The notes: generated from the letters alone by a model not told the origin. A stretch of 64,000 bases of DNA from Octopus sinensis (GCF_006345805.1 NC_043011.1:65856464-65920463), one strand, 5' to 3'; shown: positions 1 to 64,000, numbered from the stretch's first letter. Program-made: numbers and translations.

Positions 1-2965
1 AAAGATCCCATATATAGAGAGTTAGCTTGCCGAAACGGCACGTTGCTTCCCTTTCTTTATCCTTACCGAGCCTCACCTGAACAACACCCATATGGACGCC
101 GAAATGAAAATTAAATATTTCATCATTGTTCGTGCGGATCGCACAGACCGAAATATGGGAGGCCCAGCCATCTTTATCCTTGACACCTTCTCACTTGATG
201 CCAAGGACATATTTTCCAATAGCTATTGTGAATCTGTATCACTATTCAGCAAGGCCAAGAACATTATCATTGTTGGTCTTTACAGGCCTCCTCAAGCACC
301 TCTAAAGTGCTTTGAAGAGTGCCTTAGTAAGGTTAAGTCCTTCCTTCGGAAGTACAACTCCGGAAACATACTAGTGATGGGTGATTTTAACCTACCTCAT
401 GTGAACTGTCCCACAAATACTCTGAAGTTAGGCAAATGCTCTACATCAGATAGAGCAGCAGCAGAACTGCTCTTTAATCTAATGGATGAATACCTCCTGA
501 CTCAGCTAGTGCTCGAACCAACGAGACAGAATAAAACGATCTTGGATCTGGTATTGACCAATTACTCTAGCTTCGTTCACAGTATTTCAGTTGAAAAAAC
601 TCTCCTCTCAGACCACGACATGATACTCTACAATTTCAATTCCCGACATATAAAAACCAAACCATCCAATCCCAATCCATGGCACTCATTTGACAACATA
701 AACTTCCACAAAACGGACTGGGGAGCAATCAGAAAGGATCTGTCTTGCATCAACTGGTCTTTTACTCTCAATTCCACCCATATTGATACCGCATGGCAGC
801 ACTTTGAAAACATTGTCACCTATACATGCTCTTAATACGCTCGCACGAAATCTACTAACACAAACAAAAACCGGCTCCCTAAAAAGAAAAAAAACATTCA
901 TCAGGCGAATCAAATGACTCAACAAAAAAAATCAACCAATTAAAATATTCCCACATACAACATCCAAATTCAACAACAATGAAAACGCTAGAGCTGGAAA
1001 AACTTCACTACGGAACGACATGAAAACCTCCATTGAAAATCAAAGAGCTGTGGAGGAACAGTAGGTAATCAAAAATATCAAACAGAACCCAAAAGTGTTC
1101 TATCCCTATGCAAATAAGCATAGAACCACTGTCTCACCAATTGGGCCATTGATTGTTGATAACGATGATAAAGAAATCGCAGAAATACTGCAGAAACAAT
1201 ACTGCTCTGACTTTAGTGTTCCCACTGATATTGACGCAGACGTAAGAGAAGGGAACGAAGTTAATTCTCAACATAAAATCTCAGACATAACCTTCACTGC
1301 CACTGTCATCGTAGCAGCAATAAATGAGGACAAATACTACTCTTCTGTAGGCCCTGATAGATTCCCCGCTAGTCTCCTGAAGGAATGTCGACACAAACTT
1401 GCATTCCCTCTGACCAACCTCTGGAAAATTTCGTTAGACGCAGGTTATATACCGAAAGAGTTTCTATCCCAGTCAAGTCATCCCGGTTTTCAAACAGGGA
1501 ACCAGATCCCTCGCACTAAACTATCGCCCAATCTCACTCACCTCCCACATCATTAAAGTGTTTGAAAGAGTGTTAAGATCAATGATAGCTGACTTCCTGG
1601 AGACCCAGAAAATCCTAAATGCAAATCAGCATGGCTTTCGCTGTGGCAGGGACTGTCTAACACAGCTCTTACACCACATTGAAGATGTACTCAAAACCTT
1701 GGGAACACGTTCGAACTCTCCTTGTCTTCAGTAAAGCGTTCGACAGGGTAGACCATAAAATCCTACTCTCAAAATTGGCAAATGTTGGAATCCGTGGAAA
1801 AGTTCTACACTGGATCAAGTATTTCTTGGCGAATAGAACACAACATGTTGTAGTTGATGGAGTCCACTCAAGTCCAGCAAAAGTCACCAGCGGTGTTCCC
1901 CAGGGGGCTGTCTTGGGTCCGCTACTCTTCTTAAATTAAATAAACGACCTTTCCAGTGTCGTACATTACTGAAAAGTGAAAGTATTTGCTGATGACACTC
2001 AGCTCCAGCAAATCGTCAATGAAGAAGCAGACCGAACTCAACTCCAGTCTGATTTATATGCTGTGAGATCATGGGAAGACGGAAACAAAATGCAACTGAA
2101 CGAGGGAAAATATGAGCTGATGCATTTTGGAAGAAAGTCCTCACAAAACAGCCATACATTCTTCCTTCAGGGGAACCGCTCACAACCTCTAACAACATCA
2201 GAGACTTAGGTGTAATTGTTGATGACGATCTCAGTTGGAGTGAAGAAAATCAACAAGAAGGTCGATATAATTCGTAAGTTGAGTTCCTGAATCTTAACAA
2301 CTTTCCGGTCCAGAGAACAATGTGTCATCATACCACTTTTCTCCTCCTTTGTACGGCCACACCTCGAATACTGCTAACCACTGTGGTCTCCCCATACAAG
2401 ACAAAACATCTCGAAGATTTAATCACCCCAGAGAGCACTCACTAAACAAATTGAAGGCATGGCTGCTCTCGGTTATTGGGATCGCCTTAAAGCCTTGAAA
2501 CTCTACTCTCTCCAGCGCCGCCGTGAGCAGTACATCATTTGTACGATGTGAAGAATATACCGCCAACGTTGCCCAAACGACCTGAACATTAGCTTCAAGG
2601 TTCATCCAAGACTGGCACCACGGGCCATACGTCCCCTGCCCAATTCAAGATCACAGCATACATGTACAGTACAACATAATTTCTTTTCCTCAACAGGCCC
2701 TGCCCTATTTAACATTGTCCAGAAAGAGATCAAAGAAAAACAGGATCCCATCAACTTTAAACGGAGTCTGCATAGTTTCCTTCAAGGATAACCAGATAAG
2801 CCACACATAATTGGATACAACTCACCCAACAAAAACTCAATACTTTAATGGACCATAAACAAAACTTGATTTAAACAGGATTCAAATAATCCTATCAGGT
2901 GGTGCTATTAAGTTAGACATGGCCTGGACCAATCTTTGGTCGAAACATATCTAAGTTTATCTAAC
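1..2965 (+). mobile_element. Decayed APE-RT LINE (CR1/L2 group), ORF2 and 3' end; lies in the intron upstream of G1 exon 3
   Basis: Endonuclease motifs (VMGDFNLP, TILDLVLTN, LSDHDMI), RT motifs (FSKAFDRVDH, GVPQGAVLGPLLF, KVFADD) and C-terminal LYSLQRRRE; several stops and frameshifts; 3' tail ATCTAAG then (TA)n. Confidence 0.93.
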
Positions 2966-6439: not shown

Positions 6440-7805
6440 CCCTTCTAACTATATCCCCGCTGAGATGACCCGTTCTTCTTCCTTCTTTTTTATCTTGGGA
6501 GAGTGGATCTCTTCCGCTTTGTCCGAAGGCTCTCCCCCGCCTCCCGAAGACTTAGGTTCCCTCGGCGAGCAACTATTGTTGCCCGCCTTTTTCCTTTTTA
6601 ATCCTTTTTGAATTGAGGAGGCTGAAGTCTCCTCGACCACATCCACCTCTCCCTTTGACCAGGTAGGGGATGTGGCATCTAGTGACTGTTCCAGGGCCTT
6701 ACCATTGTCCTGGGGGCAGTTCCTTTTAATATTGCCTTGCTGCAGGCACGAGAGGCAATTGGGGAGACGTCCCTCAAGTTTCACCGGATACATGCAGCCA
6801 GCCATTTTCAAGAAATATGGAATAACAAGACCTGATGCGGCTGATGGGGTCCACAGGGTCAAAATCGCTTTTGACCCTTCCCAATCGACCGCCGGCAATA
6901 CCCTTACATTTAAGAGCCTGGGTCCGCCATCCTCCACTCCCCGTCGGATGGTATCTTCAATCTAATCCGCTTCGGTACCTGAGGGTAACCTACATACCCA
7001 GGCTCGTATTAATTTTCTTCCACAACATAACGGAAGGAACAGAATGTCCTTGCCTTCTAAAGGCTGACTCGCAAACTGGCGTGCCTTTTCTCGTTGTCAA
7101 ACGGCAACCATAAGGTTGCATGTTTGACACAACGGGATATATATTTTAAAGAGGACAAATATTCTTTAAGTTCATTTTTTGTGACATGTTTTGGGAAGAC
7201 GGTGATGGAATTAAGAACTTTAGAATAAGTTCTAAGTAACATCGTCTTCTCCTCCATATCTTTTAACCACTGCTTACGCAGTTTAATTTCCCACTCGAAG
7301 ACAGAGTTTTTCTTTTCAAGTTCCTTCTCTGCCATGTCAAAAAATAGTTCAAAAGTAGTTGAAAAGACAGTCTTCCAAAAAATTAAACCGTATAAAAATA
7401 AAACAAAATAAAAGAGATGGGGAGGAAACTAAAATTAAAGTAATGAAAAGAATGAACCAAAATTTAGAAAGAAAGAAAAAATAGAAGGGAAAAGTAAAAG
7501 AAAAACCTCACAAAGAGCACAGACAGGGAATCCTTTGTATAATACTCAAAAAAGGTAATCCAAATAAGTAATCCAAATTGCTTATTCTTATTTTCCTGGC
7601 GAGATACGCCCACTAGAAAGTATTTTCAAGCAAAAATTCTCAATTCAACGTTACGGTGATGAGAACCCAGTATTTTGCTCGCTATAGCGAGCCATAATTG
7701 ACAAATTTTCCTTTTGTTCTTTTTTTTCTATTCACGGAGCCGAAACTCACATCTTCTCACTGTAATAGTCCACACCAACTAGTGTTGCATTCTGGTTAAC
7801 CGGAA
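6440..7805 (-). mobile_element. L1/Tx1 element copy 3: 5'UTR and ORF1 only, 3' part lost
   Basis: ORF1 pieces 7057-7335 and 6449-6937 are homologous to ORF1 at 23342 and 27059 (EWEI..KxWLKD.E..T..LRTYSK, GSKAILTLW, degenerate CxxCxxxGHxxxxC knuckle); the 5' end abuts the SINE target site. Confidence 0.88.
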
Positions 7806-7838
7806 GTAAGCAAGCTACTTACCACGCAGCTACGCCTG
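7806..7838 (-). mobile_element. 5' head (A box) of a tRNA-derived SINE, cut at the Tx1 target site
   Basis: Minus strand CAGGCGTAGCTGCGTGGTAAGTAGCTTGCTTAC, matching the SINE head at 22598-22636. Confidence 0.8.
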
Positions 7839-7949
7839 TGACTATTATTCATGTTTGTCTGTTGCATGGAATTAAAACTGACTTTTGACGAAAGGATAAG
7901 AAGGATAAGAAGCATTTTTGCGTCCATTCTGAAGGTCTTTTTAAATATT

Positions 7950-8720
7950 TTCGGAAAGAGCCCAGTTCCAGTGATCAACGAATCGATCAAAATCTTGGCT
8001 AAGTTAACTGAATGAAGGATTAGACATACATTTAAGATAATATTTTTCAAGCTGTGGTATACATCCGCTTCAATTACACAAATCCAGTGCTATTAGCGTA
8101 TACAAATTGCCTTTTGAGTTTCAGGTACTTGGAAAGAACGATATTTCCTTGGACTTTTAAAATCAATAATGTAAATCCTATTTTGCTACATGTAAGAAAG
8201 AGGTGAGATTTCGTTAAAATCTCTAGAACATCTCATAATCACTTGTTACATTTGTCGGAATTTCTTGTGGTACTAGATTGAGAAACCAAGAAAATATGGA
8301 AACTAATTACTTCCAGCATTAAAATCATAAATTAACGATGTTGAAACAACTGCAACTTACAACAACGTCGTCATTAGGAGAGAGAAGAAACCCCAATGAG
8401 AATAGGTACAACTTACCGAGCATTATTCAACTGTATTCATTGTAGAAATGAAACAACTTCCCATAGCATTAGCAGCTAAACATTGCAGATATCGGAAAAG
8501 AAGTAGAGATTGATTAAAAACAGAGATTTTATTGCCAAATAGATAGCCGCCAGAATCAGCAGACAATATTTCGAGGCAAGACTTTCTGGTGTCTATAGCG
8601 AAAGAAGCTGTGTGGAAGAGAAGCAGTATTACTCTGAAGAGAGACTGTTTTATCTCTGCCAAAACCTCAATCGAATCGTTTGAGAATTGCATTTCACAAG
8701 AAAAATGTTAAAAATTTATG
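7950..8720 (+). mobile_element. Old L1/Tx1 ORF2 3' remnant
   Basis: Degenerate SLEHLIITC (zf-RVT region) and DFLVSIAKEAVWKR, similar to CVVAILKETVWKTR of Tx1 copy 1. Confidence 0.55.
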
Positions 8721-9248: not shown

Positions 9249-9636
9249 GTATGTCAGAAGAGTAATGTAAAATGCCAAGTGATAATAGGAAACAAATATA
9301 ATGCGTAAATAGTATTATTCTATCCAGAGCAAGATTTCTACTATAACTGATTATCTAGGACAACACTTTGAAGGAGATGTGACCTGTATCGGATCTCGAA
9401 TAACAGAGGCAAACAAATGAGTAAACATTCCCTATTTATTTTAATTCTTATATTTGGTAATTCTATTAATTACTGTCCTGGATATTTACATCTGAATTTT
9501 ACGATATAATTCTTGTTTTAATTCGTATATTTTTATCCAAACATATTATATTAGTGTTTTGTTTTCCCCACAAATATGTATAATGCTATGAATATAACAA
9601 ATCCTAAACTTATACTTTTGTCAATCTCGCGTAATT

Positions 9637-9934: not shown

Positions 9935-11169
9935 AAATCTCACTCACCTCCCACATCATTAAAGTGTTTGAAAGAGTGTTAAGATCAAGGATAGCTGACT
10001 TCCTGAAGATTCACAAACTCCTAAATGCATATCAGCATGAGTTTCGCTGTGGCAGGGATTGTCTAACACAGCTCTTACACCACATTGAAGTCATCAGCGG
10101 TGTCCCTCAGGGGAGTCTCTTGGGCCCACTCTTCTTTATAATTTATATAAACGATCTTTCCTTTGTCGTACATTACTGCAAAATGAAAATATTTGCTGAT
10201 GACACTAAACTCCAGCAAATCTTCAATGAAGAAGCAGACCAAACTCAACTCCAGTCTGATCTATTTGCTGTGAGTCAATGGGCAGACAGAAACAAAATGC
10301 AACTGAACGAGGGAAAATTCAGCTGATGCATTTTGGAAGAAATTCCACGCTAAAACAGCCATATTCTCTTCCTTCAGGGGAACCGCTCACAACCTCTAAC
10401 AATATCAGAGACCTGGGTGTGATTGTTGATGATGATCTCAGTTGGAGTGCACTCATCAACAAGAAGGTCGATATAGCTCGTAGGATGAGTTCCTGGATCT
10501 TAAGAGCTTTCCGGTCAAGAGAACAAGATATCATCTCCTTCGTTTCTCCTTTGTACGGCCACACATCGTATACTGCTGCCCACTGTGGTCTCCCCATACA
10601 AGACAAAACATATCAAGGACTGAATAACCCCAGAGGGCACTCACTAAAAGAATTGAAGTCATGGCTACTCTCGATTATTGGAACCACCTTGAAGTCTTGA
10701 AACTCTACTCTCTCCAGCGCCGCCGTGAGCGGTACATGGTTTGCACGATGTGGAGAATATACCGCCAACTTTACCCAAACGACCTCAATATTAGCTTCAA
10801 GGTTCACACTAGACTGGGACCACGGGTCCTACGTCCCCTGCCCAATTCAGGATCACTGCATATATGTACACTGCAACATAATTTCTTTTCCTCAACAGGC
10901 CCTGCCCTATTTAACATTGTCCCGAAAGAGATCAAAGAGGAAAATGATCCCATCAACTTTAAATGGAGTCTGGATAGATTCCTTACAGGAATACCAGATA
11001 AGTCACCCATAATTGGATACAACTCACCCAACACAAACTCACTACTTGAATGGACCACTAAGAAAACTTGAACAAAACTTGACTTCACAGGATTTAGATA
11101 ATCCTATCAGGTGGTGATATTAAGTTAGACATAGCCTGGACCAATCTTTGGTGGAAACATATCTAAGTT

Positions 11170-22597: not shown

Positions 22598-22636
22598 AGG
22601 CGCAGGAGTGGCTAATTAGTAAGTAGCTTTGCTAAC
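22598..22636 (+). mobile_element. 5' head of a tRNA-derived SINE interrupted by Tx1 insertions
   Basis: AGGCGCAGGAGTGGCTAATTAGTAAGTAGCTTTGCTAAC with an A-box-like TGGC; remainder of the SINE at 28243-28361. Confidence 0.85.
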
Positions 22637-25600
22637 CGCACATGCGCAGTTAGTCGGTTGCTTCCTGTTGAGCTAGAGTGGACGTGAGTAACAAGCTCTG
22701 TCCAACTATAGAAAAAAGACCAAAAACGGAAAGTTGTCGAGGTAAGTGATTTTGTTTATTGTGAGTTGGGCATAATTTATTGCGTGCCAATTATTATTTC
22801 AGTAGGTTGTGTCCAACTCTGAGACAATTTCGCCTGCGCTAGGCGGCTGCCGTTTTTGTGTTCATTGAAAAAAAAAAAAAAAAAAAAAAAAAAGTGGAGG
22901 GGCGTATACTCAGAATTCAATACAGTTACTGTTAAAATTACCGTTGACGGTAGCCAGTGCTGCGTTTGAGTTTGCTGAATTTATTCCCTTGTCAGAGTAC
23001 TTCGCAAGAAAAATATAAAAATAAGCCACTATTGGATTACCTTCCGGACCCATTTTTGTGGAGGTTGTGTTGCAGTTGCGGCGTTCCAGGTTCAACCCAG
23101 GCCGGGAGTACCGCAAGGCCAGAATATTTTTGCTGTGTTTTTTCTGTTTACTAACTTTCTTTTGAACTTCATTTAACCCCCCCCCTTTTGTTTTTTCTTT
23201 ATTGCGACTTTCCGTTAATTTTTTCCCTTCTGTTGTGCTTTCTCCTTTTTGTTTTTTCAAAAATCTATCAAATTTATTTAGACTTTTGAACTTTTTTGTT
23301 ACTGCTTTTGAGTTTAATTTGAATATATTTAAAAAAAAAACATGGCAATGAAAAATAACAAAATTTTGGAGTGGGAAATCATACCACCCAAAAAGTGGTT
23401 GAAGGACCGTGAAGATAGGACGGTGGTGTTGAGAACCTACTCCAAGGCACTTGACACCATCGCCCTATTCGAAAAGACGGCAATTGAGGAGGAGTTGGAG
23501 GAGTATTTGCCAAGAATTAAATTCATTTCCAGGGGTATCAAATATGCAACGGTGTGGTTGCTGTTTGACACCCCTGAAGAGGCTTGCAAATTTGCTAGTG
23601 AACCCTTGGAGGGTAAGGAAATCTTATACCTGCCCACGTACAAAAAAAAGAAATTGATGAAAGCTTGGATCTGCGGACTGCCACCCGACATAAAACCCGA
23701 GTGGATAGAGGAGACTATCCGCCGGGGTCTGGGTGACAGCGAAACTAAGCTCCTCAATGTAAAAGATCTTCCTGCGGCTGCTTGGGTTGGGTCGAAAGCA
23801 ATTTTGACCCTGTGGACCCAATCAGCCAATCTCCTTTTTCCAGATTTTTTGAAAATGGCCGGGTGCAGGTATCCGGTGATTCTTGAGGGTCGCGCCCCTA
23901 AGTGTCATCGGTGAAACACAGCAGAATTGGGTCTCTTGTTGATGAAAACCGATGCACGGTCAAGAAGCGGGACGAGATGTGTGAAGCACTTCACAAGCAC
24001 TTCGCCGAGTTGTTCGGGACGTGCGGGACGCTGGATCATGATGAGGCCCTTAGGGACTTCCTGTCTGGTTGCCCGCGTCTGTCGACACGAGAGGCTGAGT
24101 GCTGTGAAGGGCCAATCACAGCCGAGGAAGTAATTGAGGTGTTGGGCAAGTGCCCCGGGAAGAAGTCACCGGGTCTCGATGGTCTGCCCTATGAATTTTA
24201 TAAAAGTATGCCAGACTTGTTCGGGCACCTGCTGGCTAGCGTCTACGCCTACTGGCAGGAGAATGGGAGAATTCCCTAATCTGCGAGCCGGGGGTTAGTG
24301 ACGTTGATCAGGAAAGACCCGACCAAGGGGAACTTCAGGCCAATAACTCTCTTGAACACAGAGTTAAAGATTCTGGCCGAGGTGCTAGCAAAAAGTTTGG
24401 CGCGGGTCGTGGACAAACTTGTCGGGGAAGCGCAAACGTGCGCTATCCTTTGCAGAACGATCCACGATAATCTCCACCTTATACGCTACTCCTTAGAGAG
24501 GGTGGGGAAGCTTTCCAGTGCAAGAGGAGCAATGGTACATTTAGACCAGTCCAAAGCATTTGATAGGGTCGACCATAGGTAATTGGAGGTGGTCCTCGGA
24601 GAGGCTGGCCTAGGCCTGACCTTTCGAGGTTGGATCGCTGCTTTGTATAGCGACATCGAGTCTGTAGTCAAGGTGAACGGTTTCTTTTCGAAGCCGTTCA
24701 GGATCGAGCGTTCAGTTCGTCAGGGGTGTCCCCTGTCTTCGCTCCTATACGTATTGGCTCTTGATCCTTTGCTGCGGAAGTTGGAGATACTAGGGGGCGC
24801 GCCGCATGATCCATGGTGTTGAAGAGGAGCTACGGCGTATGCGGATGACACCTCCATCATCGTGGCAGACGAAGGCCAGCTTCCAGTGGTGGAAAAGGCC
24901 ATCAAAAGCTACGAGGCGGTGGCAGGAGCAAAGGTTAACAAGGACAAGTTGGTCGGTTTGCAACTCGGCACCTGGAGGGGCAAGCCGATGCCGTCCAATA
25001 ACATCGTAGGGCGTTGGATGGAAGGTCCTGTTAAGCTGCTCGGAGTCTGGTTCGGGCCAGAATTCCAGATAGAGAAAAATTGGAGTGAGGTGGCCAACAA
25101 GGTGACCGCTCTAACCCAGACCTGATCTGGGCGGGCGTTATCTCTGCTAGGGAAGGCGGAGGTGGTGCAGATGTTTATAGGATCAGTAATCACCTACCGT
25201 CTGACCGTGGTGCCTTGCCCCGATTTGTGATGAACAAGATGGAGAGAATCCTTTTTCGCTTTTCGTGGAAAGAGGAAAGCCACTTGTAAAGCGCTCTGTC
25301 TGCTGCCAGAAACCGCTAAAGGGTGGGCTAGGGATGCCTTGGCTGAGGATGCGAAAACTCGCGTTAAGGTTGAGGCACCTCTTGCTTTACCTGGATGGAG
25401 AGCAGGTGTGGTCACCGCACGTCCAGTTCTACCTTCCCCAGTTAACTTCCCTAACGGACATCGGTGCATGGATCAAGCGGAGACCTAAACTGTGTGAATG
25501 TCATTTGGAGTGCCGTCAGGCGCTCCAGCTAAACTCTCGGGCGGGCAACGCCGTCAACAGGAGTTCCACCACGGATTTCTATAGCGGGTTAGTGGAGGTT

Positions 25601-26424
25601 AAGTCCGAAGACGCCTTGGGGGAGACCCTGGGCTACGATGAAAATCAGTTGGTCAACCTGTTCATGAGGACGTTCGGGCCAGGGTATCTGGATAATTACC
25701 AGAAATCCCTGGCCTGGCAGTGTTTCCGTGTGGCTTTACCTGTTCGCGACAAGCTGTCAAGGCACGGAAGTGCCGTCTCGCCGACATGCCCGCGATGTGA
25801 GCAGGATAGGGAAACCGTCTTGCACGCATTCGTGGAGTGTTCGGAGTTACCGGACTGATAGCTTTTGCCGAACAACTGTTGTCAGTGATGGGAAGAGTAC
25901 AGCTATCAGCTGAATCTATCATCGAGATTGTGCCGCCTCCTTTCCTTAACAGAGAAAGAAAGGCTTGTTTTTTCTGTGTAGTAGCCATACTGAAGGAAAC
26001 AGTATGGAAGACGCGTACGAAAGGTATAGTGACAGGCACCTTTGTCTCCGGCCAGGGGTTGATTAACTTTTTTAGCTACCACCTCAGTAGCAAACTCTGG
26101 CTGGAGAAGAGGTGTCTGACACGAGATATGTTTGTGAAAAGATGGAAGCCTGTGACATGCAAGCTGGGTATGTTTGGCACCAGGTTAGTGTGACCGGATC
26201 AAAAAGAAAGTAAAGGTTCTACCCGGATGGCTGGGTGTCCGTCCATCGACATGATCATTAAGTAATATTTTTAAACATTGTCTTCGTAAAATTCATTGGT
26301 TATAATCTTATCAGTAATTTCATTCGAAAATTTTAACTGTGTTAAGCTACTTCGCCCTTTATATTTGTCTGTCCTTGTTTGTCCCCTCTTTGTAAATGAC
26401 TAAATGGCAAATTATATGAAATAA
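22637..26424 (+). mobile_element. L1/Tx1 element copy 1: 5'UTR, ORF1, internal deletion at about 23912 removing the ORF1 C-terminus and endonuclease, then RT, zf-RVT and 3'UTR
   Basis: ORF1 23342-23914; RT motifs KSPGLDGLPYEFY, NFRPITLLN, LDQSKAFDRVDH, SVRQGCPLS, AYADD; CPRCEQDRETVLHAFVEC; ends in AATAAA followed by the target duplication. Confidence 0.95.
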
Positions 26425-26438
26425 AGTAGCTTGCTTAT
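26425..26438 (+). other. Target-site duplication between tandem Tx1 copies (AGTAGCTTGCTTAT)
   Basis: Matches the target AGTAGCTTGCTTAC at 7806-7819 (minus strand) and the sequence at 22622-22636. Confidence 0.85.
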
Positions 26439-28242
26439 AGGTTGCTTCTGCGCATGTGCGAGTCAGTGTTGTGTTTGGCACTGATGCGGTGAAGACGTGC
26501 TTTCGAAGCCTCCTTGAATTGAAATATTTTGAAGCCCATTGTAAGGTAAGATTCTGTTTTCTGGATCCAGTTGAAATTTTTGTTGAACATTGTTTTTTAC
26601 AGGCAGGAAGTCCTACTGGATCCAGAATTCTGATTCTGCCGATATGGGACAAATATATTTTTCTCGCTGATTTGTGAGAATTTTTTGGGGGCGTATTCGT
26701 CTTCGATAATTGAGTGAATACTTTTCTCACCTAATTATAAGAACATGTATTGTGCTGTGAAAATCTTTAAGAATTGTGAGAACTGCTATATAGGGGAGTG
26801 TTTTGCCTCCGAAGTTTGAACAATTTTTACCAATATTTGTGGAAGTTGTGTTCCAGTTGCGGCATTTCGGGTTCAATTTAGGCCGGGAGTACCGAATGGC
26901 CAGAAGATTTTTTGCTGTGTTATTGACTTTCTTTTGAACTTTATTTGATTTTCTTTTGACTTTTAACCTTTGAACTTTATGTGACTTTCTTTTGATTTCT
27001 TTTTCTTCTCGCTTTTTAACTCTTATTTTAAATATATTTTTAAAAAAAGCAATAAAACATGGCAACGAAATATGACAAAATTTTGGAATGGGAGATTATA
27101 CCGCCTAAAAAGTGGTTAAAAGACCGTGAAGATAGGACGGTGGTGTTGAGAACCTCCTCCAAGGCACTCGACACCATCACCCTGTTCGAAAAGACGTCAA
27201 TTGAAAAGGAGTTGGCAGAGTATTTGCCAACAATTAAATTCATTTCCAGGGGTGTCAGATATGCAACGGTGTGGTTGCTATTTGACACCCCTGAAGAGGC
27301 TTGCAAATTTGCTAGTAAACCCCTGGAGAGTAAGGACATTTTATTTCTGCCCACGCATCATGGAAAGAGATTGATGAAAGCTTGGATCTGCGGGCTGCCA
27401 CCCGGGATAAAACCCGAGTGGATAGAGGAGACTATTCGCCGGGGTCTGGGTGGCAGCGGAACTAAGCTTCATAATGTGAAAATTCTTCCTGCGGCTGTTT
27501 GGGTTGGATCAAAAGCAATTTTGACCCTTTGGATCCAATCAGCCAATGTGGTTCTTCCAGATTTTTTTGAAAATGGCCGGGTGCAGGCACCCGGTGATAC
27601 TTGAGGGTCGCCCCCTAGGTGTCATCGGTGGTTGGAGTCCGGCCATATAAAGAAAAACTGTTCCCGGGAACAAAATAGGAGCCCGGAGCAGTTAAGTGAG
27701 ACCCCTGTAGAAGAGGGAATGAAGACGGCCGAGGAAGCGAAGGACTCTTCAAACAGGGGCCGAAAGAAGAAGATGGTGAGCAACAATGGTTGCTCACAAG
27801 GATACTAGAGATGAGGATGGAAAGGCGAATCTTCCGGCCACGGATAAGACGCACCCTCCCTTAGTTGAAAAGAGAAAAAAAGAGAAAGACGAAGAGAAAC
27901 GGGACATTACCGGCAGTCGGTGACATAGTACCGGAATGTCCCGGAACTACGTCGGTTGGGGTTGTGCCACCGACAGGAGAAGAAACACCGTTGGCGGGAG
28001 TTGTGCCGCAAATGAAAGAATTGAATATCCCGCCCCCGAGGAAAGACGATGTATTGATCTTCTTCCATAGAGGCGAAGCTGTTGAAAAGCTGATGGAAAA
28101 GCACCATAATGGAGCACCTTTAGCCTTCACACAGGACCCCGAATGGCCTCCACATGTAGCTGTGGAGGCCGTGGGGTCCGACGTGACGCTTGGGCTGAAG
28201 GAACCCAATGAGGATTATAGCTTGTTCCCGGGCGACGCTAAA
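26439..28242 (+). mobile_element. L1/Tx1 element copy 2: 5'UTR and ORF1 (frameshifted CCHC knuckle), ORF2 and 3' end deleted
   Basis: ORF1 27059-27604 is closely similar to the copy 1 ORF1 and continues past the copy 1 deletion point. Confidence 0.92.
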
Positions 28243-28361
28243 ACGGTTCCGGTTTCAGTCCCACTGCGTGGTACCTTCGGCAAGTTTCTTCTACCATTGC
28301 CTCTGGCTGACCAAAGCCTTGTGAGTGGAGTTGTTAGATGGAAACTGAAAGAAGCTCGTCG
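28243..28361 (+). mobile_element. 3' remainder (B box and body) of the SINE split by Tx1 copies 1 and 2
   Basis: CGGTTCCGGTTTCAGTCCCACTGCGTGG...GACCAAAGCCTTGTGAGTGG...GAAACTGAAAGAAGCTCGTCG followed by a (TA)n tail. Confidence 0.85.
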
Positions 28362-28375
28362 TATATATGTTAATA

Positions 28376-28525
<150 letters not shown>

Positions 28526-28527
28526 GT

Positions 28528-28862
28528 GAAGGCGCATGGCTCAGTGGTTAGAGCGTCGAGCTTACGATCGTGAGGTTGTGAGCTCGAATCTCGGATCGGG
28601 CTGCGTGTTGTGTTCTTGAGCAAGGCACTTTATATCACGTTGATCCATTTCATTCAGCTGTAGAAATGAGTTGCGACGTCACTGGTTCCAAGCTGTATCG
28701 ACCTTTGTCTTTCCCTTGGATAACACTGGTGGCGTGGAGAGGGGAGGCAGGTATGCATGGGCGACTGCTGGTCTTCCATAAACAACCTTGCCCGAACTTG
28801 TGTCTAGGAAGGTAACTTTCTAGGTGTAATCCCATGGTTATTCATGAGCGAAGGGGGTCTTT

Positions 28863-39712: not shown

Positions 39713-50472
<10,760 letters not shown>

Positions 50473-51369: not shown

Positions 51370-53080
51370 ACCTTGCATATATACAGAGGTATAAAATAAC
51401 ATTACGGAATACCCATGTTTGAAAGAGAAAATAATATTTATACAGGATTAACAAACACATTCTAAGTCTATAAAACAAAAAGCGTTCAAATGTTGTATAT
51501 ACTACTCAATTTGCTTATAGAACACTAAATAGCTAAAGAGAAAGGACAGACCAACTACCTTTGAAGCAGCCCAAAAGCATGACATTCCTGACTAGTAACC
51601 TAAATTTCTAATTAGAAACAAAATGCACTAAATGACAACCAATAAAATGTGCCGCAAAACATGACGTCAGTTTATATCCTTTTGTGAACCTCAAGACAAT
51701 TCCAAAACAGAAAAAGGGAAACTAACGTTTTTAATGCCATTTTCAAAACAAACTATTTCTGTACAAAATATGTGTGAAAGAATGCCTTCAACTTCCTGTC
51801 TGTTTCTGAATGTCTCATAATTGTTGTGATGACAGAGCCATTTATCATCACCTGCAACACGGCCGCAGATATGACCGGTTGTATTGCTGGTTAGAAGACT
51901 ACAGGAGATGGTGGAATATTGTGTTTGGTTGTAAAGCTTAAGCACAGGTGACACCCTAATTTCCTCTTTGAATGTTTTCTTAATTTAGCTTGGGATATTC
52001 GTGGATAGTTGAACATGAAACATTAACTTTTGCGCCACATCCCGGTTGCTTTGACGTGGATCCGATGCAATAGTCTAGTGCAAAAGGTCTTCATTCAGAA
52101 TATGTCGTCTGCAAGGACGTGGGGTGTCGGACATGTCACAATCACCATATTTAGAACTTTTAAACCACAGCTGATATATACGAGATTTCACTGCATCCAA
52201 ATACACTTCACAAATGTTTTCCATTTATTCTATAGCAGTGATTTTCTTTCGAAAATCATACAGAAAGCAATGGAGATTATTTTGCTTCATAACGTTTATC
52301 CACCATGGGATTAATTACGCAATTAACTATGAATACACGCTGACGGGATAGAAGAGATTAAATATTATTTCTAGACTGTTCCCACCCATTTTATCTTGAA
52401 TTTAACGGGATTGTCTTATTCGTCTATCATCGTGATGAAAATTCGCATTACATTCCCAACACTCTATTTATATAAATGCTATCGGCTTCTGTCATTTTCC
52501 GTTTACCAAGTCTTTCACATGGCTTCAGTCAGCTCGCGGATATAGTACAAGTCACCTGCTCAATTTTTTACGCTTGTTGTACGTATGGGTGTTAATTTGT
52601 TACGTGGATAGCGAATTTCTTGGTAGGGTTAGTCATTTTTTTAGCTTTATTGGATTTAATCCTTTGTTTTGAAAATATAATGTGAAAGGTACAAAGTTCA
52701 GGATGTAGGATATTACTAACAGGTTTGACACATTTTTTTCTGTTTTGGAATTGTCTTGAGGTTCACAAAAGGATATAAACTGACGTCATGTTTTGCGGCA
52801 CATTTTATTAGTTGTCATTTGGTGCGTTTTTTTTCTAATTAGAAATTTAGGTTACTAGTCAGGAATGTCATGCTTTTGGGCTGCTTCAAAGGTAGTTGGT
52901 CTGTGCTTTCTCTTTAGCTATTTAGTGTTCTATAAGCAAATTGAGTAGTATATACAACATTTGAACGCTTTTTGTTTTATAGACTTAGAAGGTGTCTGTT
53001 AAACCTGTATAAATATTATTTTCTCTTTCAAACATGGGTATTCTGTAATGTTATTTTAAACCTCTGTATATATGCAAGGT
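51370..53080. repeat. Inverted duplication of about 345 bp (51370-51715 / 52735-53080) with a spacer of about 1 kb
   Basis: Arms are near-identical reverse complements. Confidence 0.92.
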
Positions 53081-61821: not shown

Positions 61822-64000
61822 ATGCATTTTACTGTCTTACCTAGAAGATATGAAGGCCGACCGAAGCCAGGAGATCCAACGAGCAAACATAACTTAGAAC
61901 ATTGCAAACATCAAACATCCCTTACCTCGACATTCCTGTTAAATGTACGTGGCATTAACCCATCAATTTTTGCACAAAAATGGAAGATCCCATATATAGA
62001 GAGTTAGCTTGCCGAAACGGCTCGTTGCTTCCCTTTCTTTATCCTTACCGAGACTCACCTGAACAACACCCATTTGGACGCTGAAATGAAAATAAAATAT
62101 TTCATCATTGTTCGTGCGGATCACACAGACCGAAATAAGGGAGGCCCAGCCATCTTTATCCTTGACACCTTCTCACTTGATGCCAAGGACATATTTTCCA
62201 ATAGCTATTGTGAATCTGTATCACTATTCAGCAAGGCCAAGGACATAATCATTGTTGGTCTTTACAGGCCTCCTCAAGCACCACTAAAGTGCTTTGAAGA
62301 GTGCCTTAGTAAGGTCAAGTCCTTCCTTCGGAAGTACAACTCCGGAAACTTACTAGTGATGGGTGATTTTAACCTACCTCATGTGAACTGTCCCACAAAT
62401 ACTCTGAAGTTAGGCAAATGCTCTACATCAGATAGAGCAGCAGCAGAACTGCTCTTTAATCTAATGGATGAATACCTCCTGACTCAGCTAGTGCTCGAAC
62501 CAACGAGACAGAATAAAACGATCTTGGATCTGGTATTGACCAATTACTCTAGCTTCGTTCACAGTATTTCAGTTGAAAAAACTCTCCTCTCAGACCACGA
62601 CATGATACTCTGCAATTTCAATTCCCGACATATAAAAACCAAACCAGCCAATCCCAATCCATGGCACTCATTTGACAACATACACTTCCACAAAGCGGAC
62701 TGGGGAGCAATCAGAAAGGATCTGTCTTGCATCAACAGGTCTTTTACTCTCAATTCCACCCATATTGAGACCGCATGGCAGCACTTTGAAAACATTGTCA
62801 CCTATACATGCTCTAAACACGTTCCCACGAAATCTACTAACACAAACAAAAACCGGCCCTCTAAAAAGAAAAAAAACACTCATCAGGCGCATCAAAAAAC
62901 TCAACAAAAAAATCAACCAATTAATATATTCCCACACACAACATCCACATTCAACAACAAGGAAAAGGCTAGAGCTGGAAAAACCTCATCTGCAGACCGA
63001 CATGAAAACCTCAATTGAAAATCAAAGAGCTGTGGAGGAACAGTAGGTAATCAAAAATATCAAACAGAACGCAAAAGTGTTCTATCCCTATGCAAATAAA
63101 CATAGAACCACTGTCTCACCAATTGGGCCATTGATTGTTGATAACGATGATAAAGAAATCGCAGAAATACTGCAGAAACAATACTGCTCTGTCTTTAGTG
63201 TTCCCACTGATATTGACGCAGACGTAAGAGAAGAGAACGAAGTTGATTCTCAACATAAAATCTCAGACATAACCTTCACTGCCACTGACATCGTAGCAGC
63301 AATAAATGAGGACAAATACTACTCTGCTGTAGGCCCTGATAGATTCCCCACTAGTCTCCTGAAGGAATGTAGACACAAACTTGCAGTCCCTCTGACCAAC
63401 CTCTGGAGAAATTCGTTAGACGCAGGTTATATACCGAAAGAGTTTCTATCCCAGTCAAGTCATCCCGGTTTTCAAACAGGGAAACAGATCCCTCGCACTC
63501 AAATATCGCCCAATCTCACTCACCTCACACATCATTAAAGTGTTTGAAAGAGTGTTAAGATCAAGGATAGCTGACTTCCTGGAGACCCAGAAAATCCTAA
63601 ATGCAAATCAGCATGGCTTTCGCTATGGCAGGGACTGTCTAACACAGCTCTTACACCACATTGAAGATGTACTCAAAGCCTTGGGAACACGTTCGAACTC
63701 TGCTTGACTTCAGTAAAGCGTTCGACAGGGTAGACCATAAAATCCTACTCTCAAACTTGGCAAATGTTGGAATCCGTGGAAAAGTTCTATGCTGGATCAA
63801 GTATTTCTTAGCGAATAGAACACAACATGTTGTAGTTGATGGAGTCCACTCAAGTCCAGCAAAAGTCACCAGCGGTGTTCCCCAGGGGACTGTCTAGGGT
63901 CCGCTACTCTTCATAATTTATATAAACGACCTTTCCAGTGTCGTACATTACTGAAACGTGAACGTATTTGCTGATGACACTCAGCTCCAGCAAATCGTCA
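61822..64000 (+). mobile_element. Decayed CR1/L2-group LINE, duplicate of 1-2965; lies downstream of G4 exon 2
   Basis: Colinear at an offset of 61,982 bp, roughly 95% identical by eye, with shared stops and frameshifts. Confidence 0.93.

What the first reader, a model, noticed from the sequence alone, without database searches (positions are those of the whole stretch)
22598..28361. Sequence-specific Tx1 retrotransposons targeting a tRNA-derived SINE, inserted in tandem
Seen: one SINE is split into its A-box head (22598-22636) and its B-box/body (28243-28361) by two head-to-tail L1/Tx1 elements. Between copy 1's AATAAA end and copy 2's 5' end lies a re-created target, AGTAGCTTGCTTAT. A third copy with a different 5'UTR (7805 downward) starts at the same base of another SINE head. 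Known: Tx1-clade APE elements include target-specific lineages (U2 snRNA, tRNA arrays, microsatellites) and can stack at a regenerated site. Inference: this family uses an abundant SINE as a renewable landing pad, cutting in the anticodon-loop region of a tRNA-Gly-like head, and may have shifted from a true tRNA target. I know of no description of this pairing but cannot search for one.
Basis: partly seen in the sequence, partly recalled or inferred. Interest (0 to 1): 0.9.

Follow-up and report, generated by a model that had tools for sequence, protein, structure and literature searches.

The report
SINE-targeting Tx1-like LINE in octopus
In an octopus-type genome, dead copies of one family of jumping gene (an L1/Tx1-like LINE) sit at the same nucleotide of the same short repeat (a SINE) every time. 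This suggests a site-specific retrotransposon of a well-known kind with a target type I found no report of, but it rests on only four copies.

Summary
A SINE head (22599-22636) and its body (28243-28361) are separated by two head-to-tail L1/Tx1-like LINE copies. GTAGCTTGCTTAT (26426-26438) lies between copy 1's ...GAAATAAA end and copy 2. A third copy (7805 down to about 6450, minus strand) starts right after another SINE head ending GCTTAC. I found a fourth case in Octopus sinensis (L001): the same head, cut at the same place, then the 5'UTR and ORF1.

The four elements are divergent (ORF1 65-89% nucleotide identity, 5'UTRs 44-57%). The heads stay 81-91% like the SINE, so they are target DNA, not element DNA.

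The 13 bases are most simply a target-site duplication: bottom-strand nick GGTAA^GTAGC, top-strand nick GCTTAC^C. An Argonauta relative has an exact 17-bp duplication.

Not confirmed:
- tRNA-Gly identity: ARAGORN and Rfam see no tRNA.
- SINE abundance.
- A shift from a true tRNA target.
- Tx1-clade placement: only L1-group affinity is shown.

All four copies are dead and all are broken in the 3' half of ORF1, which I cannot explain. No further copies could be retrieved.

Tx1 elements that target other transposons and stack around a duplication are already described (Kojima 2015). This is a new member of a known kind, of moderate interest.

The parts
22599..22636 (+). SINE head (consensus positions 1-37) with an A-box-like TGGCT..GT. 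Its last 14 bases, 22623-22636 (GTAGCTTTGCTAAC), are the left copy of the target-site duplication, carrying a 1-base insertion and one substitution.
   Evidence: It is 81% identical to the recalled SINE consensus. It is the same head as at 7806-7838 and at L001 9453-9487.
22637..26425 (+). LINE copy 1. The 5'UTR is 22637-23341 and starts CGCACATGCGCAG. ORF1 is 23342-23914. An internal deletion junction at 23914|23915 removes the ORF1 tail, the endonuclease and the linker. The RT and zf-RVT region is 23926-26195, with several stops and frameshifts. The 3'UTR is 26196-26425 and ends GAAATAAA with no poly(A).
   Evidence: (RVT_1 6e-17, zf-RVT 1e-8). In one search the alignment starts at residue 148 of P0002 and residue 382 of P0006.
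26426..26438 (+). GTAGCTTGCTTAT, which equals SINE positions 25-37. I read it as the right copy of copy 1's target-site duplication, and at the same time as the left flank of copy 2.
26439..28242 (+). LINE copy 2. It has 9 extra bases AGGTTGCTT (26439-26447), then a 5'UTR from CTGCGCATGTGCG (26448-27058). ORF1 starts at 27059 and is disrupted near 27604. A CCHC knuckle and a K/E-rich region follow, then the C-terminal part of ORF1 at 27865-28242. The copy ends there and has no ORF2.
   Evidence: Comparison with the full-length Argonauta relative.
28243..28376 (+). SINE body (consensus positions about 45-163) with a B-box-like GGTTTCAGTCCC, a core, and a tail running into (TA)n. About 8 SINE bases and the third copy of the duplication are missing at the junction with copy 2.
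   Evidence: (90% to the recalled consensus). The same body is present in Argonauta.
7806..7842 (-). A second SINE head, ending ...GGTAAGTAGCTTGCTTAC and abutting the 5' end of copy 3.
   Evidence: (91% over consensus positions 5-37).
6449..7805 (-). LINE copy 3, from a divergent subfamily. The 5'UTR is 7805-7336. ORF1 runs from 7335 and has a frameshift near 7090. A CCHC-like knuckle follows. Homology to the other copies ends near 6450. There is no ORF2 and no SINE body downstream.

Best explanation
These are dead copies of an L1-group, Tx1-like, two-ORF non-LTR retrotransposon lineage that integrates sequence-specifically into the head of one octopod SINE.

Proposed mechanism. Only the DNA products are shown; the nick positions and the order of events are inferred.
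1. The element's apurinic-type endonuclease nicks the bottom strand at GGTAA^GTAGC. The A-rich 3' end of the RNA (...GAAAUAAA) is reverse-transcribed from that nick.
2. The top strand is cut 13 bases downstream, at GCTTAC^C.
3. Each insertion is therefore flanked by GTAGCTTGCTTAC, and the SINE's A-box half is separated from its B-box half.
4. Each insertion leaves two copies of the 13-mer, each still joined to one original flank. A second element can use one of them, which gives the head-to-tail pair at 22637-28242.
5. Later deletions removed the endonuclease region of copy 1. They also removed everything 3' of ORF1 in copy 2, together with the third 13-mer and about 8 bases of SINE.

The specificity is old. 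It is shared by subfamilies with 54-77% ORF1 protein identity and by at least two genomes, the window's and Octopus sinensis.
For: - Four 5' junctions lie at SINE position 37, within 2 bases: 22636|22637, 26438|26439, 7806|7805 and L001 9487|9488.
- The only preserved 3' end (26425) is followed by SINE positions 25-37.
- The rest of the SINE follows the pair at 28243, in the same orientation and the same (TA)n context. Its sequence is complementary to the head in an acceptor-like way.
- The elements are divergent: ORF1 is 65-89% identical in nucleotides and the 5'UTRs 44-57%. The adjacent heads are 81-91% identical to the SINE. The heads therefore did not co-evolve with the elements.
- A full-length Argonauta relative (L002) has an exact 17-bp duplication, so long duplications occur in a relative of this lineage.
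- RT and zf-RVT domains are present. Relatives at about 40% identity carry an Exo_endo_phos endonuclease and resemble human L1 ORF2p best (1e-72, against 1e-29 for R2).
- There is precedent. Tx1-clade families target piggyBac, Mariner, Harbinger and LTR elements, snRNA genes, 5S genes and microsatellites. Tandem insertions sandwiching a duplication are also described (PMC4494074).
Against: - There are only four copies and one 3' junction. L001 was found through the element itself, which is an ascertainment bias.
- No intact SINE with this head was seen in about 85 kb. The continuity of head and body across consensus positions 38-46 therefore rests on my memory of the consensus, not on a tool result.
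- Copy 3 and L001 have no SINE body downstream.
- Copy 2's end needs an extra deletion that stops within about 10 bases of the insertion site.
- No copy retains an endonuclease, so nothing links an enzyme to the site.
- Clade placement was not done.
Confidence: 0.75

Rival explanations
1. The SINE head is not a target. It is a 5' extension carried by, or repeatedly added to, the element. At the end of reverse transcription the enzyme would switch template to a SINE RNA or a 5' fragment of one, or a master copy would carry the head by 5' transduction. The elements would then insert anywhere.
For: - Kojima (2015) documents repeated 5' addition of small-RNA-derived sequence to Tx1-mobilised elements by template switching, and Tx1 families that share such heads.
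- Copy 3 and L001 show a head but no SINE body.
- Every head seen in about 85 kb of octopus DNA is attached to this LINE, and no intact SINE was seen.
- Copy 2's 13 bases could be a 5'-truncated head.
Against: - This does not explain why copy 1's 3' end abuts those 13 bases to the nucleotide.
- It does not explain why a headless SINE body starting at about position 45 follows copy 2.
- The junction position is constant to within 2 bases in four divergent subfamilies. Kojima's extensions vary by up to 22 bases and affect a minority of copies.
- If the heads were inherited they should have diverged like the 5'UTRs (44-57% identity), but they are 81-91% like the SINE.
- All three heads are preceded by ...ATA, which matches the TA-rich context 3' of the SINE body. 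That fits normal SINE insertions.
Confidence: 0.13
2. There was one ancestral insertion, or very few, into a SINE. It was then spread at the DNA level. Ectopic repair or gene conversion between dispersed SINE copies would copy the SINE head plus a variable length of the LINE's 5' part. That would produce 3'-truncated copies next to SINE heads without any repeated site-specific retrotransposition.
For: - Three of the four copies keep only the 5'UTR and ORF1, and they end at different points within about 330 bases. This is the opposite of the usual 5' truncation of LINEs.
- The L001 copy ends against a locally repeated segment of a tandem zinc-finger gene cluster.
Against: - The copies belong to clearly different subfamilies with different 5'UTRs. 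At least three or four founding insertions at the same SINE nucleotide are still needed.
- The tandem pair with the 13-mer between the copies is a retrotransposition signature.
Confidence: 0.07
3. Coincidence or assembly artefact: ordinary nested insertions of a non-specific LINE into a common repeat, or mis-joined repeats.
For: The window is very rich in repeats. The loci have since been reshaped by deletions.
Against: - The same nucleotide is hit four times, in two assemblies.
- The 15-mer occurs twice against 0.14 expected, both times at element ends.
- Mis-assembly would not produce the same junction in O. sinensis chromosome CM016886.1.
Confidence: 0.03

Closest known systems
Tx1L in Tx1D (Xenopus laevis), the founding Tx1 element. 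It inserts at one site of a non-autonomous piggyBac transposon (cited in PMC4494074).
   Same: It is an APE-type, two-ORF LINE of the L1 group whose target is a specific sequence inside another interspersed repeat, so the element lives inside a multicopy 'safe' site.
   Different: Here the target is a retroposon (a SINE), not a DNA transposon. Clade membership of the octopus element was not tested. No intact endonuclease is available in the sequences studied.
Tx1-Mar families and SINEU-3 in Mariner-N4_AMi (crocodilians; Kojima 2015, PMC4494074).
   Same: They insert at a fixed position of a transposon with a long fixed duplication of 16 bases. Tandem insertions 'sandwiching a TSD' are common. 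This is the same architecture as 22599-28376.
   Different: The host phylum and the target differ. In crocodilians the partner SINE shares the LINE's target, whereas here the SINE is the target. Its tail (..GAAAGAAGCCCGTCG(TA)n) does not resemble the LINE's tail, so the SINE is probably mobilised by another LINE.
Dewa, Keno, Mutsu, Kibi and Koshi. These are Tx1-clade families specific for small RNA genes or microsatellites. Keno (U2 snRNA genes) and Kibi/Koshi ((TC)n and (TTC)n) are cited in PMC4494074.
   Same: They show sequence-specific integration into multicopy sequences. The octopod relatives L004 and L002 abut (ATT)n and AT-rich sequence, in the manner of Kibi and Koshi.
   Different: The target here is not a functional RNA gene. 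ARAGORN and Rfam do not recognise it as a tRNA.
R1 and R2 in rDNA. My statement that they form tandem copies is from my own knowledge. R2's 28S rRNA gene specificity and its co-transcription with the target are cited in PMC4494074.
   Same: They use the 'safe harbour in a repeated unit' strategy.
   Different: They belong to different clades (R1 has an APE endonuclease, R2 a restriction-like one). They depend on co-transcription with the target. Here each copy brings its own 5'UTR with promoter-like motifs.

Membership tests
Tx1 clade of non-LTR retrotransposons (L1 group) | The RT domain falls in the Tx1 clade in a phylogeny with labelled references (RTclass1 or Repbase). | not testable with these tools
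   No labelled Tx1 or L1 reference sequences were available. The nearest database proteins carry no clade names. The only related fact is that a 2026 O. vulgaris repeat annotation lists 13 recently active 'L1-Tx1' families (PMC13282606).
Tx1 clade of non-LTR retrotransposons (L1 group) | L1-group ORF2 architecture: an N-terminal apurinic-type endonuclease, RT, and a C-terminal Cys-rich domain. | tested here: inconclusive
   RVT_1 and zf-RVT are present in copy 1. The endonuclease region is deleted in all four copies. Relatives at about 40% identity (P0006, L002) have Exo_endo_phos, RVT_1 and zf-RVT, and they match human L1 ORF2p best.
Tx1 clade of non-LTR retrotransposons (L1 group) | A separate ORF1 with a nucleic-acid-binding module and a CCHC knuckle. 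| tested here: inconclusive
   ORF1 is present in all copies and has no Pfam hit above the cut-off. zf-CCHC scores below threshold in P0001 (E 0.058) and in the Argonauta ORF1 (E 0.0037). There is no match to a solved structure.
Target-specific non-LTR retrotransposon (Kojima's working criterion: the same sequence in more than 20% of flanks) | The same repeat, at the same position, flanks independent copies. | tested here: met
   4 of 4 5' junctions lie at SINE position 37, within 2 bases. The 1 of 1 preserved 3' junction lies at SINE position 25. The sample is tiny and partly ascertained through the element.
Target-specific non-LTR retrotransposon (Kojima's working criterion: the same sequence in more than 20% of flanks) | A target-site duplication of constant sequence and length. 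| tested here: inconclusive
   There is one pair: 22623-22636 and 26426-26438, 13 bases plus a 1-base indel and 1 substitution. The other copies lack 3' ends.
Target-specific non-LTR retrotransposon (Kojima's working criterion: the same sequence in more than 20% of flanks) | The encoded endonuclease cleaves the target sequence. | not testable with these tools
   No copy with an endonuclease was recovered, and this needs a biochemical assay.
tRNA-derived SINE (the target) | The head is recognisable as a tRNA (cloverleaf, assignable anticodon). | tested here: not met
   ARAGORN finds nothing in the window, in the joined empty site or in the recalled consensus. Rfam finds no tRNA at gathering threshold over the whole window, and none at E up to 10 in 28200-28720, which covers the body and the neighbouring SINE. 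'tRNA-Gly-like' is unconfirmed.
tRNA-derived SINE (the target) | Split internal Pol III promoter (A and B boxes) and acceptor-like pairing of the two ends. | tested here: inconclusive
   By eye, TGGCTGTGTGG in the head of L001 resembles an A box (the window's copy-1 head reads TGGCTAATTAG), and GGTTTCAGTCCC in the body resembles a B box. GCGCAG and CTGCGT pair in the fold of the joined flanks.
tRNA-derived SINE (the target) | A short, dispersed, multicopy element with a conserved body. | tested here: met
   There are three heads and two body fragments in octopus DNA (the second at 52484-52563). The same body, with a different head, occurs four times in 34 kb of Argonauta DNA.

The most novel reading that the evidence does not exclude
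An old octopod LINE lineage has specialised on one SINE head module as its only landing site. It has kept that specificity through several subfamily turnovers and across species.
- Every hit separates the SINE's A-box half from its B-box half. The LINE would therefore also act as a sequence-specific killer of potential SINE source copies, which would be a LINE-versus-SINE antagonism.
- The 13-mer regenerated at each insertion lets elements stack.
- The recurrent loss of everything 3' of ORF1 might reflect a real process, such as ORF1-only derivatives or repair-mediated copying between SINE copies, rather than random decay.
Probability: 0.3. Interest if true: 0.55.

Novelty: new member of a known kind. 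Interest (0 to 1): 0.38.

Why it matters
If a census confirms it, this would add a SINE to the list of Tx1-type targets. That list so far holds DNA transposons, LTR elements, small RNA genes, satellites and microsatellites.

It would also give cephalopod genomes, which are very repeat-rich, a clear case of one retroelement using another as a safe harbour. A target with very many copies would be an interesting contrast to low-copy targets such as U2 genes, where keeping the specificity is puzzling.

An intact endonuclease from this lineage, with a defined site of about 13-20 bases, would also be a convenient system for studying how APE-type endonucleases acquire sequence specificity.

It does not change any concept. 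The mechanism, the stacking around a duplication and the 'TE inside TE' niche are all described already.

Tried and rejected
Searches for more copies of the family:
- An ORF1 protein search gave one hit only, O. sinensis P0001.
- An RT search gave nothing closer than 54-59% identity. Those hits were other cephalopod families with other flanks: (ATT)n, AT-rich sequence, or unrelated sequence.
- A SINE-peptide search gave one Argonauta hit, with a different head.

DNA pattern scans:
- The 3'-junction 18-mer against JGI metagenomes gave 25 hits. All had unrelated flanks, as chance matches would.
- The head 18-mer against bacterial and archaeal genomes gave 3 hits, all in bacterial contigs, which I took as chance matches without reading their flanks.
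- Two scans of viral contigs gave two hits to the head 17-mer, which I did not inspect, and none to the body 21-mer.
- These collections gave no octopod sequence for the patterns used, so they tell us nothing about the family.

Other attempts:
- An exact look-up of a window-encoded ORF, meant to identify the assembly and fetch more of the genome, found it is not on record.
- A literature search for the SINE sequence strings gave 0 papers.
- tRNA detection in the SINE was negative.
- Cluster names for clade assignment: none were informative.

Ideas rejected:
- Tandem duplication of one insertion. The distal 5'UTRs are unrelated.
- The 13-mer as part of the element's own 3' terminus. Related 3' ends finish ...AATAAAGAAAT(C) and lack it. 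The 13-mer is also contiguous with A-box sequence in three heads.
- The SINE as this LINE's own non-autonomous partner. The tails are unrelated.
- HAL1-like 'half elements' with a defined 3' end. The three truncation points differ.


Full report
**What is there**

The window is AT-rich, repeat-dense animal DNA. Its ORF1 sequences have a single database relative, an uncharacterised Octopus sinensis protein (P0001, 72% identity). The source is therefore an octopod genome.

Anatomy between 22599 and 28376:
- A 38-base SINE head lies at 22599-22636.
- LINE copy 1 lies at 22637-26425.
  - Its 5'UTR is about 700 bases and ORF1 is at 23342-23914.
  - A deletion junction at 23914|23915 joins the start of the ORF1 zinc knuckle directly to the RT region.
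  - The RT region aligns from residue 148 of P0002 and residue 382 of P0006, so the ORF1 tail, the endonuclease and the linker are gone.
  - The RT and zf-RVT region (23926-26195) has several stops and frameshifts.
  - The 3'UTR ends GAAATAAA at 26425, with no poly(A).
- The 13 bases GTAGCTTGCTTAT lie at 26426-26438.
- LINE copy 2 lies at 26439-28242. It has a 5'UTR, a disrupted ORF1 from 27059 and the C-terminal part of ORF1. It then stops, with no ORF2.
- The SINE body lies at 28243-28361 and runs into a (TA)n tract.

On the minus strand a second SINE head (7838-7806) ends GCTTAC. It directly abuts the 5' end of a third copy, which runs from 7805 to about 6450 and also lacks everything after ORF1.

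**Is the flanking sequence really a SINE, and one SINE?**

I used a consensus recalled from memory only as a search probe.
- Its positions 47-163 matched 28245-28361 at 90%.
- Positions 1-47 matched 22599-22644 at 81%.
- Positions 5-37 matched 7838-7806 at 91%.
- Positions 1-35 matched the O. sinensis locus at 89%.

The same body, with a different head, occurs four times in 34 kb of Argonauta hians DNA. The body is therefore an old octopod SINE module.

Several observations indicate that the head and body in the window are halves of one copy:
- They are non-overlapping and in the same orientation.
- They lie in the same (TA)n context.
- The head's GCGCAG pairs with the body's CTGCGT when the two flanks are joined.

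Two caveats apply.
- I never saw an intact copy with this head in about 85 kb of octopus sequence. The 9 bridging bases (consensus positions 38-46) therefore rest on memory alone.
- ARAGORN and Rfam do not recognise any tRNA here. 'tRNA-Gly-like' is unconfirmed. What can be said is that the cut site lies in a GGTAAG-N7-CTTACC hairpin between A-box-like and B-box-like motifs.

**Independent copies hit the same nucleotide**

Fetching the O. sinensis gene gave a fourth case. It has a complete SINE head (L001 9453-9487), then a 5'UTR homologous to those of copies 1 and 2, ORF1 (10001-10846), and a truncation near 10975.

The junction table places the element's first base after SINE position 37, within 2 bases, in all four copies. 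Three of the 5'UTRs begin with the same motif, CYGYRCATGYG. Copy 2 has 9 extra bases before it.

The elements are not recent copies of one another:
- ORF1 nucleotide identity is 89% for copies 1 and 2, and 65-77% for all other pairs.
- The 5'UTRs are 44-57% identical.
- The heads are 81-91% identical to the SINE. They behave as samples of the SINE family, not as part of the diverging elements.

**The 13 bases**

GTAGCTTGCTTAT equals SINE positions 25-37. It repeats the last 13-14 bases of the head at 22623-22636. The simplest reading is a target-site duplication, with the bottom-strand nick at GGTAA^GTAGC and the top-strand nick at GCTTAC^C.

A second insertion into either copy of the duplication gives exactly the observed order: head, copy 1, 13-mer, copy 2. 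Kojima (2015, PMC4494074) describes this for Tx1-mobilised elements in crocodilians, with a fixed 16-base duplication and tandem insertions 'sandwiching a TSD'.

A full-length Argonauta relative (L002, with ORF1, endonuclease, RT and zf-RVT) is flanked by an exact 17-base duplication. Long duplications therefore occur in a relative of this lineage.

Related 3' ends finish ...AATAAAGAAAT(C) and do not contain the 13-mer.

**What kind of element**

- RVT_1 and zf-RVT are present.
- Relatives at about 40% identity carry an Exo_endo_phos endonuclease. They match human L1 ORF2p far better than R2: 1e-72 against 1e-29.
- ORF1 has a sub-threshold CCHC knuckle and no other recognisable domain.

This places the family in the L1 group. 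'Tx1 clade' is plausible, because L1-Tx1 families are annotated in O. vulgaris (PMC13282606). I could not test it, because no labelled references were available.

**Rivals**

The serious rival has precedent in the same literature: 5' addition of small-RNA-derived sequence by template switching, or heads carried by the LINE itself.
- It would explain why copy 3 and L001 have a head but no body, and why every head I saw is attached to this LINE.
- It does not explain the nucleotide-exact abutment of copy 1's 3' end to SINE positions 25-37.
- It does not explain the headless SINE body after copy 2.
- It does not explain the constancy of the junction across divergent subfamilies.
- I give it 0.13.

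DNA-level spread of a few founding insertions by repair between SINE copies could explain the odd truncations. It would still need several site-specific founders. I give it 0.07. Chance or mis-assembly gets 0.03.

**Unexplained**

All four copies are broken within the 3' half of ORF1:
- Copy 1 has an internal deletion that starts there.
- Copies 2, 3 and L001 end there, at three different points within about 330 bases.

This is the opposite of the usual 5' truncation of LINEs. In L001 the break abuts a locally repeated segment of a tandem zinc-finger gene cluster, which suggests rearrangement after insertion. Four copies are too few to decide.

**Limits**

No further copies could be obtained. 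The protein databases hold almost no octopod TE ORFs. The DNA collections that can be scanned returned only unrelated or uninspected non-octopod matches to the patterns used. The window's own ORFs are not indexed. The genome-wide flank census that would settle the matter could not be run.

**Verdict**

The site-specific reading is the best explanation, at 0.75. The tRNA-specific parts of the interpretation are not supported.

I found no report of a Tx1-type element targeting a SINE. However, Tx1 families that target other transposons, with fixed duplications and tandem stacking, are established knowledge. This is a new member of a known kind, of moderate interest.

Noticed in passing
window 22637-22649, 26448-26460; L001 9488-9499; window 7807-7800 (minus): The extreme 5' ends of copies 1 and 2 and of the O. 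sinensis copy share CYGYRCATGYG. This looks like a decayed TGCGCATGCGCA palindrome of the NRF1-site type. Copy 3 instead begins with an ETS-like ACTTCCGG that spans the junction. These promoter-like motifs suggest the elements carry their own Pol II promoter rather than relying on the SINE.
   Followed up: no
window 22742-22802 and 26546-26602: Both 5'UTRs contain a short segment bounded by GTAAG...(Y)nCAG. This looks like a retained intron in the LINE's 5'UTR. L001 has a similar GTAGG... segment near 9586.
   Followed up: no
window 22868-22893: A 26-base poly(A) run lies inside copy 1's 5'UTR and is absent from the other copies. It could be the tail of a small secondary retro-insertion.
   Followed up: no
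window 23914|23915, 28242, about 6450; L001 about 10975: All four copies of the family are broken within the 3' half of ORF1. One has an internal deletion and three are 3'-truncated at different points. No copy keeps the endonuclease.
   Followed up: partly
window 28530-28700: A second, different SINE with tRNA-like boxes (GGCTCAGTGGTTAGAGCG ... GAGCTCGAATCTCGGA) lies just beyond the (TA)n tract. Rfam does not call it a tRNA even at E up to 10.
   Followed up: partly
window 92-1556 and 62074-63538: Two nearly identical copies of another endonuclease/RT LINE sit at the two ends of the window, in the same orientation. They could be a young family or a segmental duplication.
   Followed up: no
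window 48260-50290 (minus): Two long intact ORFs (232 and 427 aa) whose C-terminus looks like a GIY-YIG domain, as in Penelope-like elements. The 427-aa ORF is not on record in the protein index.
   Followed up: partly
L002 2869-8667 (Argonauta hians): A full-length relative (ORF1 of about 476 aa, then ORF2 with endonuclease, RT and zf-RVT) is flanked by an exact 17-bp duplication, TATTTTTAAAATTTGTA, in AT-rich DNA. A second partial 3'UTR copy (about 8420-8650) lies inside the duplication.
   Followed up: partly
L004 1990-2105; L001 1-640: Other cephalopod relatives end ...AATAAA(A)GAAAT(C). One is followed directly by (ATT)n in a JGI metagenome contig, which may be a microsatellite-specific sister family. 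Another, in O. sinensis, is followed by unrelated sequence.
   Followed up: no
L005 10040-10157; L002 2-86, 860-938, 2334-2443: The SINE body (core plus tail) is shared between Octopus and Argonauta, but it is joined to a different head in Argonauta (a long GCATCGGATTTGAAAC...GTTTCAAATCCGATGC hairpin). SINE modules have been reshuffled in octopods.
   Followed up: partly
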